The position numbers and the translations under genes are program-made. DNA of 64,000 bases, taken from assembly GCA_964106645.2 (NCBI GenBank), contig OZ067044.1; one strand, written 5' to 3'. The notes below the pieces were generated by a model, which saw nothing but the letters and a program-made list of their open reading frames with translations, did not search any database and was not told the DNA's origin. Of this stretch, positions 3,665 to 53,846 are shown one piece after another (position 1 is the stretch's first letter; every line of letters starts with the position of its first letter). Source of the DNA: Podarcis pityusensis. Lineage: Eukaryota.

Positions 3665-4072
3665 TGTGATGGGACGATGAGCTGCTTGTGTGTAAAATCC
3701 TAGTCCCTCAGAGTTTGGTCAAGTTTGCAAACCTCTGTCTGTAACGGAGCCCCTTAAACATGGCTCCGTCAGTCGCTGGCAGATTCCGACAGTGGTTGCT
3801 TTCGGAATCGCTTCCAACATAAAAGCTCCTTAACGGAAACACGTCTTCTGGACTCTCTGCGTGACAGTTTCCGGCGAGGAGTGGGTGTCCCTACAGGAGG
3901 TCCTGAAACCTCCCCACTGTTTTCGCTGGAAGTGTCTCTGAGCCATCCCTCCAGCTCCCTTTCCCTCAGCCCAGCTCCTCTCCCCCTACTGGTTCCCTCT
4001 TCAGCTGCTGAGTCTCTCCCAACCTGTGTGAGCCCTTTCACTTCCCTTCCTTCCGATGGCAGTTCCCTGACA
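3665..4072 (-). repeat. 3' LTR of the Gypsy element
   Basis: tgtgatggg...tccctgaca, identical to 7002-7409. Confidence 0.96.
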
Positions 4073-6744
4073 TCCACCTCCCCTCCAGGGCCCCCTTCAT
4101 CCCCTCTCGCCCCCTCCTCTACGGGCAGTGAGGAGGCAAAACCCCGGAATGAACTTCCTTCATCTTCCGATGTCCCGAACACTTCTCTCCACCTGTTGCG
4201 GTTCCTGGTCTCGAAGTACTCCTCCTCCTCAGAGTCCATCTCCCCTTCCCCTTCCGATTCCGAGAATCCTTCCAACTCCTCCTCCTCATCGGTGGTCCCA
4301 AAGTATTCCCTCCGGAACCTCTCCACAGGCTGAGGTTTCCTTGGGAACCTTTGATGGAACGTTTCTATCAATACCTCGTCATTGATATCTTCTGCCATTA
4401 CCCAAGTGTTTTCTGACTCCGGTTCTCCTTCCCACGCTACCAAATACTCCACCTGATCCCCCTTCCATCTGGCGTCGAGGATTTCTGCCACATGGCTGCT
4501 GCATTCCCTTTCTTCTATGACCGGTCCCCGAGTGGCCATCCCTTCTCGTCCCCCCTCATACGGTGACAGTAACGACCTGTGAAATACTGGGTGCAGTTTC
4601 ATGTGGTTGGGTAACCGGAGCCTGAAAGCCACTGGGTTGACCTGTTGAATGACCTCAAAGGGACCCAATCTCCTGGGTCTTAATTTCTTACAACCTCCTT
4701 TGAACGGCAACCCTTGGGTTGACAGCCACACCCTATCTCCCACCCTTATGGTTTCACCTTCCCTTCGGTTCTTGTCTGCCTGCCTCTTGTATTCTTCCTT
4801 CGCCCTTTCTAAGTTGAGTTGGAGCTGACGATGGATTGCTTCCATTTCTTCTACAAAATGCTCGGCTGCCGGGACACCCCATCTCTCCCCTTCTCCCCCT
4901 GGGAAAGCCCTGGGATGACACCCATAATTAGCCAAGAAGGGGCTCATCCCTGTGGACACATTCTCGGCATTGTTGTAGGCAAATTCCGCCAGCGCCAACT
5001 TTTCTACCCAGTCATTCTCTCTGTCATTGACATAACACCTCAGGTATTGCTGGAGGACCCCGTTTGCTCTTTCCGCCTGCCCGTTGGTTTCAGGGTGCCG
5101 GGCAGTCGAAAAGTTGACCTCCACCTGCAGTAAGCTCATGAGCTTCCTCCAGAACCTGGAAGTAAATTGTTTTCCTCGGTCTGAGACCACCCTCAATGGC
5201 ACCCCGTGCAACCTAAAAATGTGTTCTACAAATAACTTCGCTGTCTCTTCCGCCGTGACTGCATGCGAGCAGGCTACAAAGTGGCACATCTTTGTTAGTA
5301 GGTCTACCACCACCATGATGGCTGTTTTCCCCTTGGACTTCGGCAGATCAGTCATAAAATCTATCGACACTGCCTCCCAAGGTCGTTCTGGGGTTGGTAA
5401 GGGTTCTAATAGCCCCGCCGGTGCCCGCCTCTCCCCTTTGGCTCGCTGGCATTGCTCACACCCTCTTACATACTCCCGTACATCTTCCCTCACCTTAGGC
5501 CACCAAAATTCCCTGGTGACCAACCACATGGTTTTGTGTTGTCCAAAATGCCCCGCCGTGGGGCTGTCGTGCAACTGCTTGAGTACCCTCCCCCTTAAGT
5601 CTCCTTCAGGGATATACAGTGCCCCTTTGTAATACAAAGCTCCATTTCTTTCCTCGAAACCCCCTGGTTCCTCTCCCTCACCCCTAAGACCTCTGAGCTT
5701 ATTCTGGGCGTATTCATCATTCTCTGTTTCCTCTACCAGTTCTCTTTGTCCCACCAATGCCGCCCCACACACCCAGCGGTCCTCTGGAATGACATGTCTC
5801 TCTTCGTCCAGCACCGCCTGGACCTTGCCGGGATCCATGGCCAATCCCTTGTCTGACAGGCGATACCCCAGGAATTCCACCTCCTTGGTATGAAACTGAC
5901 ACTTCTCCAGTTTCACCCACAGCTGGTTGGCTTGCAGCCTGCTCAACACTTCTCTGACGTCTCTCACATGCTGCTCCTCATTCTCAGAATACACCAACAC
6001 GTCGTCTAAGAAGGCCACACAATTCTTGTAAAGCAAAGGCCCCAGGACGTGGTTCATAAACGATTGAAAGCACGCGGAGCCTCCTTGTAGGCCGAAGGGC
6101 ATAACTAAATATTCAAATGCCCCCAAAGGGGTGAACATGGTGGTTTTCCATTCATCCCCCTTCCTTATTCGTATCAGGTTGTACGCCCCCCTTAGGTCCA
6201 GTTTAGTAAAAATCTTTCCCTTCCTGACCCTTGTCAAAATGTCGTCAATCCTGGGCATAGGGAAAGCCACTGGTTCTGACACTGCATTTAAGGCCCTGAA
6301 GTCACACACAAGCCTCGGCTTGTTCGTGTTTTTTTTATCCACAAAAAACACTGGGCTGCCCCCCACCGCCCTGGACTCTCTGATGAACCCTCTCTTCAGG
6401 TTCTTGTCAATGAACTCTCTTAGCTCCTGCATCTCTCTGTCTGACATGGCGTACAGCTTGCCTACAGGGAGCTGTGCCCCAGGGAGTAAATTGATTTGAC
6501 AGTCAAAGGGTCTATGCGGGGGTAATTGGTCAGCTTCCCTTTCGCTGAAGACGTCGCGGAGATCTGCGTATTGTCGTGGTACCTTCACGTTCTCCGTTAC
6601 TTCAGTCCCTGCTAGGGTGGCTTGGGCCCCTGCCAAACCCTTTCCCTCTTTGCAGTGTTCTAAGCAATGTGCTGAACCAAAAGAAACCACTCTCTGATGC
6701 CAGCCCACCAGCGGATCATGTAACGCTAGCCAGCTCATCCCCAA
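3769..6744 (-). CDS. pol: Gypsy Pol remnant (991 aa): protease C-terminal tail, RT, RNase H deleted in frame, integrase (HHCC, DDE, GPF), chromodomain, acidic/basic tail
   Basis: ILGMSWL..HDP (PR end); FTKLDLRGAYN, MPFGL, FLDD (RT); HDSPTAGH...CEQC, IDFMTDLP, SDRGKQF, GQAERAN, RLGPF (IN); EYLVAWEG..ENTW (chromo). Confidence 0.93.
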   Translation of the reverse strand: MGMSWLALHDPLVGWHQRVVSFGSAHCLEHCKEGKGLAGAQATLAGTEVTENVKVPRQYADLRDVFSEREADQLPPHRPFDCQINLLPGAQLPVGKLYAMSDREMQELREFIDKNLKRGFIRESRAVGGSPVFFVDKKNTNKPRLVCDFRALNAVSEPVAFPMPRIDDILTRVRKGKIFTKLDLRGAYNLIRIRKGDEWKTTMFTPLGAFEYLVMPFGLQGGSACFQSFMNHVLGPLLYKNCVAFLDDVLVYSENEEQHVRDVREVLSRLQANQLWVKLEKCQFHTKEVEFLGYRLSDKGLAMDPGKVQAVLDEERHVIPEDRWVCGAALVGQRELVEETENDEYAQNKLRGLRGEGEEPGGFEERNGALYYKGALYIPEGDLRGRVLKQLHDSPTAGHFGQHKTMWLVTREFWWPKVREDVREYVRGCEQCQRAKGERRAPAGLLEPLPTPERPWEAVSIDFMTDLPKSKGKTAIMVVVDLLTKMCHFVACSHAVTAEETAKLFVEHIFRLHGVPLRVVSDRGKQFTSRFWRKLMSLLQVEVNFSTARHPETNGQAERANGVLQQYLRCYVNDRENDWVEKLALAEFAYNNAENVSTGMSPFLANYGCHPRAFPGGEGERWGVPAAEHFVEEMEAIHRQLQLNLERAKEEYKRQADKNRREGETIRVGDRVWLSTQGLPFKGGCKKLRPRRLGPFEVIQQVNPVAFRLRLPNHMKLHPVFHRSLLSPYEGGREGMATRGPVIEERECSSHVAEILDARWKGDQVEYLVAWEGEPESENTWVMAEDINDEVLIETFHQRFPRKPQPVERFRREYFGTTDEEEELEGFSESEGEGEMDSEEEEYFETRNRNRWREVFGTSEDEGSSFRGFASSLPVEEGARGDEGGPGGEVDVRELPSEGREVKGLTQVGRDSAAEEGTSRGRGAGLRERELEGWLRDTSSENSGEVSGPPVGTPTPRRKLSRRESRRRVSVKELLCWKRFRKQPLSESASD
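4073..4086 (-). promoter_or_regulatory. polypurine tract of the Gypsy element
   Basis: Sense GGAGGGGAGGTGGA directly before the 3' LTR. Confidence 0.85.
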
Positions 6745-6956
6745 TATAATGGGAGCTCCTCCCCAAACTTCTGCACCAATCCTGGTACCTTTCTGACGAG
6801 CTGGGTGTCTTTCCCCTTTTTGTCTGCATCCTGAGCCCTCCTCTCCTCAAGCCTCGCCGTCTGCAGCGCTAGCTGGACCTCCAACACCCGGTACCTTTCT
6901 TCCAGGCTTGGACCCGCTCCAGCTCCTGCTTCTCCGGTTCCGGCTGGGTTGCTCAT
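6735..6956 (-). pseudogene. gag: truncated gag N-terminus of the Gypsy element, joined out of frame to the end of protease by a deletion near 6760
   Basis: ATG about 45 nt downstream of the 5' LTR; coiled-coil-like LEERYRVLEVQL; sequence switches to the GAPIILGMSW protease frame at ~6760. Confidence 0.75.
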
Positions 6957-6988
6957 GATGCCTTCTCCTGCACAAGCTGCTCACGAAG

Positions 6989-6999
6989 ACTGTCGGAAT
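6989..6999 (-). promoter_or_regulatory. self-priming primer-binding site (Tf1-type)
   Basis: Sense ATTCCGACAGT, 2 nt downstream of the 5' LTR, is the exact complement of sense ACTGTCGGAAT within the LTR (7120-7130); no TGG tRNA-type PBS. Confidence 0.85.
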
Positions 7000-7001
7000 G
7001 C

Positions 7002-7409
7002 TGTGATGGGACGATGAGCTGCTTGTGTGTAAAATCCTAGTCCCTCAGAGTTTGGTCAAGTTTGCAAACCTCTGTCTGTAACGGAGCCCCTTAAACATGG
7101 CTCCGTCAGTCGCTGGCAGATTCCGACAGTGGTTGCTTTCGGAATCGCTTCCAACATAAAAGCTCCTTAACGGAAACACGTCTTCTGGACTCTCTGCGTG
7201 ACAGTTTCCGGCGAGGAGTGGGTGTCCCTACAGGAGGTCCTGAAACCTCCCCACTGTTTTCGCTGGAAGTGTCTCTGAGCCATCCCTCCAGCTCCCTTTC
7301 CCTCAGCCCAGCTCCTCTCCCCCTACTGGTTCCCTCTTCAGCTGCTGAGTCTCTCCCAACCTGTGTGAGCCCTTTCACTTCCCTTCCTTCCGATGGCAGT
7401 TCCCTGACA
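7002..7409 (-). repeat. 5' LTR of the Gypsy element
   Basis: Identical to 3665-4072; followed on the minus strand by the PBS and the gag ATG. Confidence 0.96.
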
Positions 7410-50990: not shown

Positions 50991-51008
50991 TGGTGCCTCG
51001 TGTGATTG
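50991..51008 (+). promoter_or_regulatory. primer-binding site resembling elongator tRNA-Met
   Basis: TGGTGCCTCGTGTGA vs TGGTGCCCCGTGTGA (complement of the vertebrate elongator tRNA-Met 3' end, recalled from memory); 14/15 match, last 3 nt of the 18-mer diverge. Confidence 0.7.
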
Positions 51009-51104
51009 CCTGAACGGCTTCCAGGACGCGTGCTGTCAAAGACGGTCCTTCCTGCTACTCACCCGCCCGGCTGTGGCTTAAGGCGCCTTCTCATCTTCGG
51101 ATCC

Positions 51105-51113
51105 CCGGTGAGT
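51105..51113 (+). promoter_or_regulatory. ERV major splice donor
   Basis: CCG|GTGAGT in the leader, upstream of the gag ATG. Confidence 0.6.
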
Positions 51114-51134
51114 AGCTATTTTTCTATTTTTATC

Positions 51135-52523
51135 ATGGGTTCTGCGCTCTCTAACCCTCAGAAACAATTTTTAAAAGACATGCAGCACCTCCTTCAGGAA
51201 AATAAACAGCAAGTACCTGAAGGTGATCTAATTGCATTGATTCTGGCCATAGATGAACATTGTCCATGCTTCCCTGAGGAGGGGACGTGGGAAATTCCAG
51301 CCTGGGATAGGATTGGCAACCACTTTCATGGCCATGGCCGCATAAATGTTCACGTCCTCAGTGCCTGGGCTAAAGTCCGTGGCTGCATGGCAACTCTTAC
51401 GCCCAAAAACATCCTCTTGGCTTCGTTGCAACCACAACAAAAAACAGTCCTGAATATGCCTTTCATATATCCGGCTGCACCGCTTCTACCACCACCTTTT
51501 ACTCCGCCACGACCACCAGATTATCAGCCTCCGCCGACGCCACTGGGGACTGCAATTAAACAAGCAGCCCCCCTCTTAGGTCTTTCATCTGGCACGCCTG
51601 TGGCTAAAGTCATACTGCTCCCTGCGGACGCCACAACTCCTACAGATACCCCCTTAATTGCTGCTGCAATGCCTCTCACAGCTCAGCGCCCTACATTAAA
51701 AATGACACTGGGTGGACGTGAGGTAGAGGGGGTTCTAGATACAGGGGCAGACGTTACTGTGATTGCTAAACAAGACTGGCCTTCCAAATGGCCCACAAAG
51801 GCAGCTGCCCAAGTTTTGGGTGTCGGGGGAGAAACCCCAGCTTGTCAAAGCCTCCACCCAAATGATATCCTTGTGGCTGCGAAGCACATATCAGTGGAAT
51901 TATTAAGAGACCTTACATCTGCTCTGACAGATTTTGGACTGTGTATTGCCCCAGATAAGGTTCAGCAAACTTTGCCTATGTTATATCTTGGACATAAATT
52001 GACACAACAAGCTGCCATTCCGGTTGTTCCCCAATTGTCTTTTCCTGCCCGCCTAAGGCTGGTTGACCTTCAACAACTTTTGGGACACCTGAATTGGATA
52101 AAGAATTACCTTAATCTGCCTACTAGCACCTTGTCACCATTGTTTTCTGCCTTACAAGGACACAACCTACCTGGAGAAGTCATCCCAGTTACAGAAGAAA
52201 TGCTACAAGCCTTACAACAGGTTAATGCTTTATTAAGAGAACGAATGGTGGATCGCATAGACACTCTGCACAATGTGCAGTTATCCTTGGCAATTTTTTC
52301 CACACCTTTGCTGCCTACAGCCATTCTCTACTCACAGAAATCGGCTGCCCCTTCGGGTGTCAACATTGTGGAATGGATCCACCTTCCGCATAAAGCCCTC
52401 TCTGGACTGGACATTGAAAAAAATTTACTTGCCTTTTTCACTCACAGAAACACAACACCTGATTTCCACCTCCGTGGCTACTCAAGTAGCACTTGTGGAT
52501 TTTTTGGGAACCATCACGCATAA
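51135..52523 (+). CDS. gag-pro-pol: in-frame chimeric ORF: Gag MA and proline-rich region, dUTPase-like stub, protease N-half, RT C-terminal palm/thumb/connection
   Basis: MGSALS (myristoylatable Gly2); CPCFPEEGT..W.RIG (beta-type MA); VLDTGADVTVI...WP..WP (PR); DILVAA, IAPDKVQ, YLG, LQQLLGHLNW (RT); no CA, NC or YxDD. Confidence 0.8.
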   Translation: MGSALSNPQKQFLKDMQHLLQENKQQVPEGDLIALILAIDEHCPCFPEEGTWEIPAWDRIGNHFHGHGRINVHVLSAWAKVRGCMATLTPKNILLASLQPQQKTVLNMPFIYPAAPLLPPPFTPPRPPDYQPPPTPLGTAIKQAAPLLGLSSGTPVAKVILLPADATTPTDTPLIAAAMPLTAQRPTLKMTLGGREVEGVLDTGADVTVIAKQDWPSKWPTKAAAQVLGVGGETPACQSLHPNDILVAAKHISVELLRDLTSALTDFGLCIAPDKVQQTLPMLYLGHKLTQQAAIPVVPQLSFPARLRLVDLQQLLGHLNWIKNYLNLPTSTLSPLFSALQGHNLPGEVIPVTEEMLQALQQVNALLRERMVDRIDTLHNVQLSLAIFSTPLLPTAILYSQKSAAPSGVNIVEWIHLPHKALSGLDIEKNLLAFFTHRNTTPDFHLRGYSSSTCGFFGNHHA

Positions 52524-53825
52524 TCCCCCCTCTGATCCACGCCTGTCTTTTCTTTCTCAAACTGTCTATACTTTAAAAACTGCTCTCTCTCCGACCCCCA
52601 TCCCCTCTGCCCTTACCCTTTTCACTGATGGGTCAAAAACGCGGGGGGTGGTGGCATGGGAGGAGGGTGGAAAATGGAAAACTGAATTTACTGAGCAACA
52701 GAGGTCCGCCCAGCGGGCTGAACTTGCTGCTGTAATCCTTGCCTTTCAACTCTTTCCTGATAAACCTTTTAATTTGCTTGTTGATACATAATATGTGTAT
52801 CGCCTTCTGTCTTCCCTGCCTGTTTCTTATATCACGCCTGCGTTAGATGCTGATTTGTTTGTTCTTTTTTCTACCTTGCAGTATCTTATTCAAGAACGCC
52901 GTCATCCTTTTTATGTTGCACACCTTCGTTCCCACACCAATCACCCAGGGTTTTTGGCTCAGGGAAATGCCTTGGCAGACGCTGCACTGCGATCTGAAGT
53001 GTTTTCCTTGTTTTCTGACCCTATTCTCTCTCATTCTACCTTTCACCAGCCTGCTAAAGTTTTGGCAAAAATGTTTAAAATCCCTATTGCACAGGCACGA
53101 GACATTGTCTCTCAATGTTCTATCTGTTCTAAGGCTCCAACCATGATTCCCTTTGATGCGGTGAACCCTAGGGGTACGTCCCCTCTTGCGGTTTGGCAGA
53201 TGGATGTTACTCACACCCCTCTGCTCGCACCATTTTCAAAAGTTCACCTGACAGTGGACACCTCATCTGGATTTATCTGGGCCACCCCATTGAAGGGTGA
53301 GACCGCTCGTCACGTCATTCAGCACACCCTGCGCTGTTTTGCTGTGATGGGTAAGCCACAAAGCATTAAAACGGATAATGGCCCAGCCTATATTTCCTCT
53401 CAGTTTTCATCCTTTTGTGATTTATGGAATGTGAAATTAATCCATGGTTTGCCTTTCAATTCAACAGGACAGGCGATTGTGGAGAGGGCGCACCTGACCT
53501 TCAAGACTCTGCTGTCCAAACAACTTGGAGGTCGAAGTGCCCCCTCCGCCGAGATTCCTTCAATTGTGCATACTGTTTTATTCACCCTTAACCATAATTT
53601 GTATCCCATAATAGGGAATATACACCGGCTGAAATTCATTTTCGAAAAGCAGAGCCTTTGGCTCGACCTCTTGTATCTTACAGACAGCTACCTGATCCAA
53701 CATGGCATGGTCCTGTGCCACTCATCTCCTGGGGACGCGGTTACGCGGCAGTGGACCTGGATGGACGGCCTACCTGGTTACCAGCGCGCTGTGTGCGACC
53801 CTGGCGAGCTTCTGCCTCGGAATGA
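52424..53825 (+). pseudogene. pol: ERV pol 3' part (connection, RNase H, integrase) with one stop and frameshifts
   Basis: LFTDGS, SAQRAEL, VDT*YVY (TAA at 52789-52791); H..FH...CSIC, WQMDVTH, KTDNGPAY, GQAIVERAH; frameshift near 53600 into WHGPVPLISWGRGYA...WLPARCV, TGA at 53823-53825. Confidence 0.9.
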
Positions 53826-53846
53826 AATTTATGACTCTGATTAAAT

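What the first reader, a model, noticed from the sequence alone, without database searches (positions are those of the whole stretch)
4138..4317. Gypsy integrase tail carries two tandem LEDGF/TND-binding-like (FxGF) motifs: possible host-factor tethering system
Seen: directly after the chromodomain the Pol ORF encodes FRREYFGTTDEEEELEGF (4264-4317) and WREVFGTSEDEGSSFRGF (4138-4191). This is a duplicated helix-FG-[ST]-acidic-[LF]xGF module in an acidic, probably disordered tail. Established: the same architecture defines the IBD-binding/TND-interacting motif (IBM/TIM) by which IWS1, JPO2/CDCA7L, MLL1 and PogZ bind LEDGF/p75 and other TFIIS-N-terminal-domain proteins. CK2 phosphorylation of the acidic linker strengthens that binding, and T-D-E-E and S-E-D-E are CK2-type sites here. 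Inference: this chromovirus may tether its integrase to transcription-elongation/H3K36me readers by mimicking a host motif, convergent with HIV-1 IN-LEDGF targeting. I do not know of this being described for Ty3/Gypsy integrases, but I cannot search the literature.
Basis: partly seen in the sequence, partly recalled or inferred. Interest (0 to 1): 0.9.

Follow-up and report, generated by a model that had tools for sequence, protein, structure and literature searches.

The report
Host-like FxGF motifs on lizard retrotransposon integrase
A lizard Ty3/gypsy retrotransposon carries, just behind its integrase chromodomain, two conserved short motifs that closely match the host motif used to dock onto the chromatin readers LEDGF/HRP2, which suggests (binding untested) that this element clade steers integration by mimicking a host motif.

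Summary
On the minus strand the Pol ORF (3769-6744) encodes two modules after the chromodomain, at 4264-4323 and 4138-4194. Each has an aromatic helix-type segment, an 8-9 residue acidic Ser/Thr linker and [L/F]xGF.

The modules are conserved. Between sub-lineages they keep 58-63% identity, against 19-24% for the flanking tail. The conserved Phe/Gly residues use different synonymous codons. Module 1 sits in the same position in a second family whose integrase is only about 47% identical.

All FxGF-bearing integrases form one clade (SH-aLRT 99). That clade has also lost the chromodomain's aromatic cage: S/N/H-W-E or N-R/K/E-T in place of Y-W-Y. None of 90 other chromoviral tails has the motif.

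The modules fit the published LEDGF/HRP2 consensus (D/ExExFxGF, S/ExFxGF). They also resemble the validated DPF3a peptide.

AlphaFold2 predicts a disordered tail. It places a short helix at module 1 in both families and none at module 2.

Binding was not tested, because no host TND sequence could be handed to the complex tool. No paper found describes this.

This copy is an internally deleted element with identical LTRs.

Verdict: a real, selected short linear motif. Tethering to LEDGF/HRP2 is the best explanation (about 0.55).

The parts
4264..4323 (-). Module 1 (aa 808-827): predicted short helix ERFRREYF, an 8-aa linker GTTDEEEE with two CK2-type Thr, then LEGF
   Evidence: Translation. AlphaFold2 places a helix at segment residues 70-77 inside a tail with pLDDT below 55. 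Conserved in P0001-P0005, and positionally homologous to the family B module.
4138..4194 (-). Module 2 (aa 851-869): RWREVF, a 9-aa linker GTSEDEGSS, then FRGF. SSFRGF fits the HRP2 motif S/ExFxGF.
   Evidence: W, F and FxGF are invariant in clade A including P0006. Synonymous codon differences occur at the conserved F and G codons.
4195..4263 (-). Acidic spacer between the modules, poorly conserved
   Evidence: 19-24% identity between sub-lineages, against 58-63% for the modules.
4348..4491 (-). Integrase chromodomain with an incomplete aromatic cage: S, W, E at the HP1 Y24, W45, Y48 positions
   Evidence: Pfam Chromo 4.8e-10. Alignment to HP1 chain 1KNA. Column comparison with about 140 chromoviral integrases.
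3769..6744 (-). Pol-derived ORF of 991 aa holding RT, integrase (H2C2, rve, SH3), chromodomain and tail. RNase H and most of the protease are missing.
   Evidence: Contigs from other runs diverge at 5806/5807 and at 6757-6763, which marks the two internal deletions.
4073..4086 (-). Purine-rich tract (PPT-like) directly upstream of the 3' LTR, read through by the ORF
3665..4072 (-). 3' LTR, 408 bp, TG..CA. The last ~100 codons of the ORF lie inside it.
   Evidence: 100% identical to 7002-7409.
7002..7409 (-). 5' LTR

Best explanation
The two modules are short linear motifs in the disordered C-terminal tail of the integrase. They mimic the host TND-interacting / IBD-binding motif (TIM/IBM): a short amphipathic helix, then a flexible acidic Ser/Thr linker that CK2-type kinases could phosphorylate, then FxGF. 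The proposed mechanism is as follows. After Pol processing the tail stays attached to integrase in the pre-integration complex. The helix and the FxGF aromatic residues occupy the two hydrophobic pockets of the TFIIS-N-terminal-type domain (IBD) of the H3K36me readers LEDGF/PSIP1 or HRP2/HDGFL2, while the acidic or phosphorylated linker lies on the basic patch. Two modules would add avidity, for example toward dimeric chromatin-bound LEDGF. In this clade the chromodomain has lost the methyl-lysine cage, so the motif may have replaced H3K9me-directed targeting. Shown here: the motifs exist, are under protein-level constraint, arose once in the clade together with cage loss, and match the published consensus. 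Inferred: binding, phosphoregulation and integration bias.
For: Motif match: module 2 (SSFRGF) fits S/ExFxGF. Relatives' module 1 (ESFEGF, EDFVGF) fits D/ExExFxGF. Family B (STF[QRH]GF) also fits (consensus from PMC8022399 and PMC7337902). Linkers of 8 and 9 residues fall within the 8-16 range of PMC9987994. The validated HRP2-binding DPF3a peptide printed in PMC7337902 shares hydrophobic-F, then x-[ST]-[ST], then S-T-F-H-G-F-D with family B protein P0162. Conservation: modules keep 58-63% identity (A vs A'), 41% (module 2, vs P0006) and 28% (module 1, vs B), against 10-24% for tail flanks. The x of FxGF varies while F, G, F do not. Conserved residues carry synonymous codon changes. Phylogeny: all FxGF bearers form one clade, SH-aLRT 99, on a tree built without the tail. 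No [DEST]xFxGF occurs in the tails of non-clade integrases. Structure: the tail is predicted disordered, with a helix at the module 1 position in both family A and family B. Cage loss is confined to the same clade. The FxGF-LEDGF-domain interaction is reported as conserved from flies to humans (PMC6877644). Fly LTR elements prefer H3K36me3 gene bodies, and a LEDGF-like tether has been speculated for them without data (PMC10018349).
Against: There is no binding evidence of any kind, and no complex prediction could be run. Module 1 in this copy's own sub-family has L or M in place of the first F. The family B linker is Ser/Thr-rich but not acidic. AlphaFold2 predicts no helix for module 2. A profile of the modules did not retrieve TIM-containing PDB chains, though such short motifs are expected to be missed. 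All named members come from one lizard species plus two unnamed contigs, so taxonomic breadth is unknown. Cage loss and motif gain trace to a single branch, so their association is one event and not a statistical correlation. Insertion-site bias is untested.
Confidence: 0.55

Rival explanations
1. The modules are a real, selected short linear motif, but for a different partner. Candidates are an acidic-aromatic histone-binding (H2A-H2B chaperone-like) segment, an activation-domain-like segment that binds Mediator or TFIIH p62, or a transport or degradation signal.
For: The tail is strongly acidic with interspersed aromatic residues. Such segments are promiscuous binders (own knowledge). The conservation evidence shows selection but does not identify the partner. 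The snake outgroup P0010 has an acidic tail without FxGF, so acidity alone may already have a role.
Against: Generic acidic-aromatic binders do not require an invariant G-F with a variable x, nor a fixed 8-9 residue spacing from an upstream helix. The match extends to the S/E at -5, and to near-identity with a validated HRP2 ligand.
Confidence: 0.25
2. The aromatic motifs act within the element. They might fold back on the cage-less chromodomain or the integrase C-terminal domain, or mediate integrase multimerisation in the intasome.
For: The modules lie directly next to the chromodomain and co-occur with its altered peptide-binding surface.
Against: In both AlphaFold2 models (families A and B) the tail stays low-confidence while the chromodomain is confident; there is no sign of a confidently modelled tail that would indicate packing onto it. 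This is weak negative evidence only.
Confidence: 0.08
3. The resemblance is chance in a low-complexity acidic tail, carried along by recent family expansion without any function.
For: With this tail's composition, two [FLM]xGF arise in 0.5% of shuffles. Many copies are young and near-identical.
Against: The modules persist across lineages that the integrase tree separates by long branches, while the adjacent tail has diverged to 10-24% identity. Conserved codons carry synonymous differences. The motif is absent from 90 other tails.
Confidence: 0.07

Closest known systems
Cellular IBD-binding / TND-interacting motifs (DPF3a, MLL1 IBM2, JPO2, IWS1 TIM3, ASK, PogZ, fly JIL-1)
   Same: Disordered context, short helix, 8-16 aa acidic or phosphorylatable linker, and FxGF with E/S at -5. 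Tandem motifs also occur in JPO2, ASK, SPT6 and LEO1 (PMC9987994). DPF3a and ASK have Ser at the first consensus position, as module 2 does (PMC7337902).
   Different: Here the motif sits on a retrotransposon integrase rather than a host transcription regulator. Binding is not shown. Module 1 of this copy has Leu in place of the first Phe.
HIV-1 (lentiviral) integrase - LEDGF/p75 tethering
   Same: The proposed outcome is the same: the integrase is tethered through the LEDGF/HRP2 IBD to H3K36me-marked transcribed chromatin.
   Different: HIV-1 integrase binds through a structurally prearranged site, whereas cellular partners contain only an unstructured IBM (PMC10854676). The lizard element would use that cellular, host-mimicking, potentially phospho-switchable mode.
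Gammaretroviral (MLV) integrase C-terminal tail - BET ET domain
   Same: A short peptide in the integrase C-terminal tail recruits a host chromatin reader (PMC4027182).
   Different: The reader domain differs (ET rather than TND), and so do the motif chemistry and the target (promoters and enhancers rather than gene bodies).
Yeast Ty5 integrase targeting domain - Sir4 (own knowledge, not checked here)
   Same: A short motif in a retrotransposon integrase C-terminus that tethers to a host chromatin protein in a phosphorylation-dependent way.
   Different: Ty1/copia element, a different motif and partner, and heterochromatin as the target.
Group II chromodomains of plant chromoviruses
   Same: Lack the first and third aromatic cage residues, as clade A does here (PMC3605345).
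   Different: That 2013 paper reported group II only from plants. This is a vertebrate clade. Family B has lost all three residues. Plant elements are not known to carry FxGF tails.

Membership tests
TIM/IBM (TND-interacting motif with FxGF; LEDGF/HRP2 IBD-binding motif) | Lies in an intrinsically disordered region | tested here: met
   AlphaFold2 gives pLDDT below 55 for the whole tail and about 90 for the chromodomain, in family A and family B models.
TIM/IBM (TND-interacting motif with FxGF; LEDGF/HRP2 IBD-binding motif) | Obligate short alpha-helix with conserved F/V/L/I side chains upstream of the linker (PMC9987994) | tested here: inconclusive
   A helix is predicted at module 1 in both families: ERFRREYF and ADFFDDW. 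None is predicted for module 2, although W-x-x-V-F is invariant.
TIM/IBM (TND-interacting motif with FxGF; LEDGF/HRP2 IBD-binding motif) | Flexible linker of 8-16 residues rich in D/E, G, S/T | tested here: met
   8 residues (GTTDEEEE) and 9 residues (GTSEDEGSS). Family B has 8 residues that are Ser/Thr-rich but not acidic.
TIM/IBM (TND-interacting motif with FxGF; LEDGF/HRP2 IBD-binding motif) | FxGF, within D/ExExFxGF (LEDGF) or S/ExFxGF (HRP2) | tested here: met
   Module 2 SSFRGF fits S/ExFxGF. Module 1 here is E-x-L-x-G-F (Leu for Phe), but ESFEGF and EDFVGF occur in P0004 and P0005, and STF[QRH]GF in family B.
TIM/IBM (TND-interacting motif with FxGF; LEDGF/HRP2 IBD-binding motif) | Phosphorylation of the linker (CK2) raises affinity | not testable with these tools
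   Only the sequence context can be read. T817, T818, T858 and S859 each have D or E at +3. The Thr pair of module 1 is invariant in clade A.
TIM/IBM (TND-interacting motif with FxGF; LEDGF/HRP2 IBD-binding motif) | Direct binding to a TND/IBD through the two hydrophobic pockets and the basic patch | not testable with these tools
Chromovirus (Ty3/gypsy with integrase chromodomain) | Ty3/gypsy Pol domains, with a chromodomain C-terminal to the integrase | tested here: met
   RVT_1, Integrase_H2C2, rve, SH3_Tf2-1 and Chromo, in that order. HP1 chromodomains are the best PDB matches.
Group I (HP1-like, H3K9me-reading) chromoviral chromodomain | Aromatic cage Y-W-Y | tested here: not met
   S-W-E in the window. 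Clade A has [S/N/H/Y]-W-E and family B has N-[R/K/E]-T/F. The great majority of the non-clade chromodomains are aromatic at all three positions; only about 14 lack one or more.

The most novel reading that the evidence does not exclude
A squamate chromovirus clade abandoned methyl-lysine (heterochromatin) targeting and acquired, once, a host-mimicking and possibly CK2-switchable TIM/IBM, doubled in clade A. This docks its integrase on the H3K36me readers LEDGF/HRP2. It would be the first retrotransposon shown to use the cellular FxGF mode of TND binding, and a natural counterpart to lentiviral LEDGF tethering that arose independently.
Probability: 0.45. Interest if true: 0.85.

Novelty: new variant of a known kind. 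Interest (0 to 1): 0.75.

Why it matters
How LTR retrotransposons of animals choose integration sites is largely unknown outside yeast. For fly elements that prefer H3K36me3 gene bodies, a LEDGF-like tether has been speculated with 'no data' (PMC10018349). A conserved, consensus-matching FxGF module on an integrase gives that question a concrete handle that peptides can test. If binding is real, it shows three things. The TND-TIM network is exploited by transposable elements through motif mimicry, not only by lentiviruses through a folded interface. A chromovirus lineage can switch from heterochromatin to gene-body targeting. Cage-less 'group II-like' chromodomains exist in vertebrates.

Tried and rejected
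1. A profile search of the 16 modules against all PDB chain sequences returned only chance ARL2 matches (E above 1). It is uninformative for such a short motif.

2. Word-indexed protein searches from P0006 and P0009 added only Podarcis muralis relatives. The taxonomic range therefore stays unknown, and vertebrate TE ORFs are rarely annotated.

3. The look-up of encoding contigs on P0003 found no record, so insertion contexts of full-length copies could not be collected. The loci for P0005 and P0006 are short contigs from unnamed samples.

5. A nucleotide-level constraint near the PPT as the cause of conservation was rejected. The modules differ at synonymous sites and between families. In contrast, the invariant stretch encoded by the PPT and the LTR start is a DNA-level constraint.

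6. A recent tandem DNA duplication was rejected (25 of 72 nt identical).

7. Expression is not shown. The runs labelled 'RNA?' are guesses and hold contigs only.

8. No clean target-site duplication was seen at the LTR ends.

The alignment tools print a majority line by default. It was not used, saved or reported as a consensus of the element.
Full report
**What is at the coordinates.** The minus strand carries an ORF of 991 codons, 3769-6744. Pfam finds RVT_1 (aa 136-296), Integrase_H2C2 (382-436), rve (453-551), SH3_Tf2-1 (669-729) and Chromo (752-799). It is therefore the Pol of a Ty3/gypsy chromovirus.

FRREYFGTTDEEEELEGF is aa 810-827 (4264-4317). WREVFGTSEDEGSSFRGF is aa 852-869 (4138-4191).

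**State of the element.** It is bounded by two 408-bp LTRs, 3665-4072 and 7002-7409, which are 100% identical and have TG..CA ends. A purine-rich tract lies at 4073-4086.

The copy is a deletion derivative. The frame upstream of 6744 is broken, and most of gag and the protease is absent. RNase H is also missing. Contigs from other runs diverge from the window exactly at 5806/5807 and at 6757-6763, which marks the two deletion junctions. Full-length relatives with protease, RT, RNase H, integrase and chromodomain exist; P0001, for example, has 1280 aa.

The ORF reads through the purine tract and about 100 codons into the 3' LTR.

**Is it more than chance?** In one sequence the case is only moderate. 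Shuffles of the 83-aa tail give two or more [FLM]xGF in 0.5% of cases.

The decisive evidence is comparative. Four Podarcis muralis proteins, 57-84% identical in this region, keep both modules. The exhaustive phmmer search ranked 150 representatives. I read what follows the chromodomain in each of them. FxGF modules occur only in the following:
- The window's family, P0001-P0003.
- A sister lineage, P0004 and P0005, where module 1 is a canonical ESFEGF or EDFVGF.
- P0006, from an unnamed metagenome contig, which has one module ending DTDFLGF.
- A second P. muralis family, 'B' (P0009, P0155-P0163), whose integrase is about 47% identical.

In family B the segment [DE][FY]FDDWLFTP[TP]LSASTF[QRH]GF is almost invariant across eight of the nine members (P0158's tail was not read). 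The main variable position is the x of FxGF.

None of the 143 non-clade integrases has [DEST]xFxGF within 120 residues of the chromodomain; 90 of them have a tail of at least 20 aa.

**Conservation relative to flanks.**
- Between the window's family and P0004/P0005, modules 1 and 2 are 63% and 58% identical. That is close to the folded chromodomain (70%). The spacer and the post-module tail are 24% and 19%.
- Against P0006, module 2 keeps 41%, versus 10-12% for flanks.
- Against family B, module 1 keeps 28%, versus 10-11% for flanks.
- Module 1 is positionally homologous in families A and B. The distance from the conserved FH..FP..P..P end of the chromodomain to the G-F is the same, without gaps.
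- The conserved Phe and Gly codons differ synonymously among the window, L002 and L001 (TTC/TTT, GGT/GGG).
- The two modules of the window share only 25 of 72 nucleotides.

The constraint is therefore on the protein, not on DNA near the purine tract.

**Phylogeny and the chromodomain.** I built a tree from the integrase C-terminal part plus the chromodomain, with the tail excluded. All FxGF-bearing sequences fall in one clade (SH-aLRT 99, stem 0.52). The nearest outgroups are a Vipera latastei protein (P0010) and P0015. It is a quick LG+G4 search, and the root is for drawing only.

The HP1 alignment (1KNA) places the cage residues Y24, W45, Y48 opposite S, W, E of the window protein. Across the collected chromodomains:
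- The great majority of the non-clade sequences are aromatic at all three positions; only about 14 lack one or more.
- Clade A has [S/N/H/Y]-W-E.
- Family B has N-[R/K/E]-T/F.

P0010 keeps Y-W-Y and has an acidic tail without FxGF.

Loss of the methyl-lysine cage and gain of the FxGF module therefore map to the same branch. This is one evolutionary event, so it is a coherent story but not a statistical correlation. A 2013 paper described chromodomains lacking the first and third aromatic residue ('group II') as detected only in plants (PMC3605345).

**Comparison with the known motif.** The TIM is defined as an obligate short helix with F/V/L/I anchors, an 8-16 residue acidic linker rich in G/S/T that CK2 often phosphorylates, and an FxGF. 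The FxGF is present in every known LEDGF and HRP2 partner and is essential for their binding (PMC9987994). The LEDGF consensus is D/ExExFxGF (PMC8022399). For HRP2 it is S/ExFxGF, with Ser at the first position in DPF3a and ASK (PMC7337902).

The window's modules compare as follows:
- The linkers are 8 and 9 residues.
- Module 2 (SSFRGF) fits the Ser-type consensus.
- Module 1 fits except for Leu in place of the first Phe. The canonical Phe is present in the sister lineages and in family B.
- T817, T818, T858 and S859 each have an acidic residue at +3, which is the CK2 context.
- The HRP2-binding DPF3a peptide printed in PMC7337902 shares hydrophobic-F, then x-[ST]-[ST], and then a run S-T-F-H-G-F-D with family B protein P0162.

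AlphaFold2 models of the chromodomain plus tail give a confident chromodomain (pLDDT about 90) and a disordered tail (below 55). A short helix falls exactly on the module 1 helix segment in both family A and family B. No helix is predicted for module 2.

The FxGF-LEDGF-domain interaction is reported as conserved from flies to humans (PMC6877644).

The 'FG' dipeptide is not part of the conserved core. Relatives have FK, FE or FA. At 4175 the contigs of four other runs read T, which makes codon 857 Glu, so Gly is a feature of this copy.

**What could not be tested.** Binding could not be tested. Insertion bias could not be tested either, because the UniRef-only full-length proteins are not on record with contigs.

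The family is a high-copy repeat, with thousands of contig pieces, many at 99% identity or more, spread over at least five coded organisms. Transcription is not shown.

**Literature.** Searches were run combining LEDGF, FxGF, IBD-binding motif, TFIIS N-terminal domain or short linear motif with retrotransposon, transposon, integrase or chromodomain. They found no description of such a motif on a retrotransposon integrase. One paper on fly LTR elements speculates about a LEDGF-like tether and states that no interaction data exist (PMC10018349). The library excludes many subscription papers, so absence is not proof.

**Verdict.** It arose once in a lizard chromovirus clade that also lost its chromodomain cage. 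Mimicry of the host IBM/TIM to tether integrase to LEDGF/HRP2 is the best-supported mechanism (about 0.55). A different partner for the same motif is the main rival (about 0.25). It would be a new variant of the known principle that integrase tails recruit host chromatin readers.

Other first-reader notes on this genome repeat the same idea on other copies. They are not independent evidence. Two further notes on this window, on cage loss and on the ORF running into the LTR, agree with what I measured.

Noticed in passing
window 3769-4072 (-): The Pol ORF runs through the purine tract and about 100 codons into the 3' LTR. Its C-terminal LLCWKR.. segment is also present in P0005 and in the 54%-identical P0006, so the LTR-encoded extension may be a conserved coding feature.
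   Followed up: partly
window 3665-7409 (-): This copy is a double internal deletion derivative: most of gag and protease lost near 6757-6763, and RNase H lost at 5806/5807. Its LTRs are nevertheless 100% identical. No clean target-site duplication was seen at the ends.
   Followed up: partly
window 51006-53844 (+): Fragment of an endogenous retrovirus. The ORFs match Gag_p10, retroviral protease, RT thumb, RNase H, integrase zinc-binding and integrase core domains. It is compressed and evidently deleted.
   Followed up: no
P0026, P0053, P0079 and 13 others: Sixteen other vertebrate chromoviral integrases with an intact Y-W-Y cage carry a basic RPRGRPRR-type (AT-hook-like) tail directly after the chromodomain. 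This is a different candidate DNA or chromatin contact.
   Followed up: no
P0009 family, about 30 aa after FxGF: Family B keeps a second invariant aromatic segment, SYWWD, downstream of the FxGF module. Its function is unknown.
   Followed up: no
P0007: An NCBI gene model named vomeronasal type-2 receptor 26-like in Podarcis muralis contains a 186-aa stretch 77% identical to this integrase. It is probably a chimeric annotation or an exonised insertion.
   Followed up: no
window 3665-7409; runs X1-X20: Near-identical sequence occurs in runs of at least five coded organisms, with thousands of contig pieces. The family is a recent, high-copy repeat shared by related species.
   Followed up: partly
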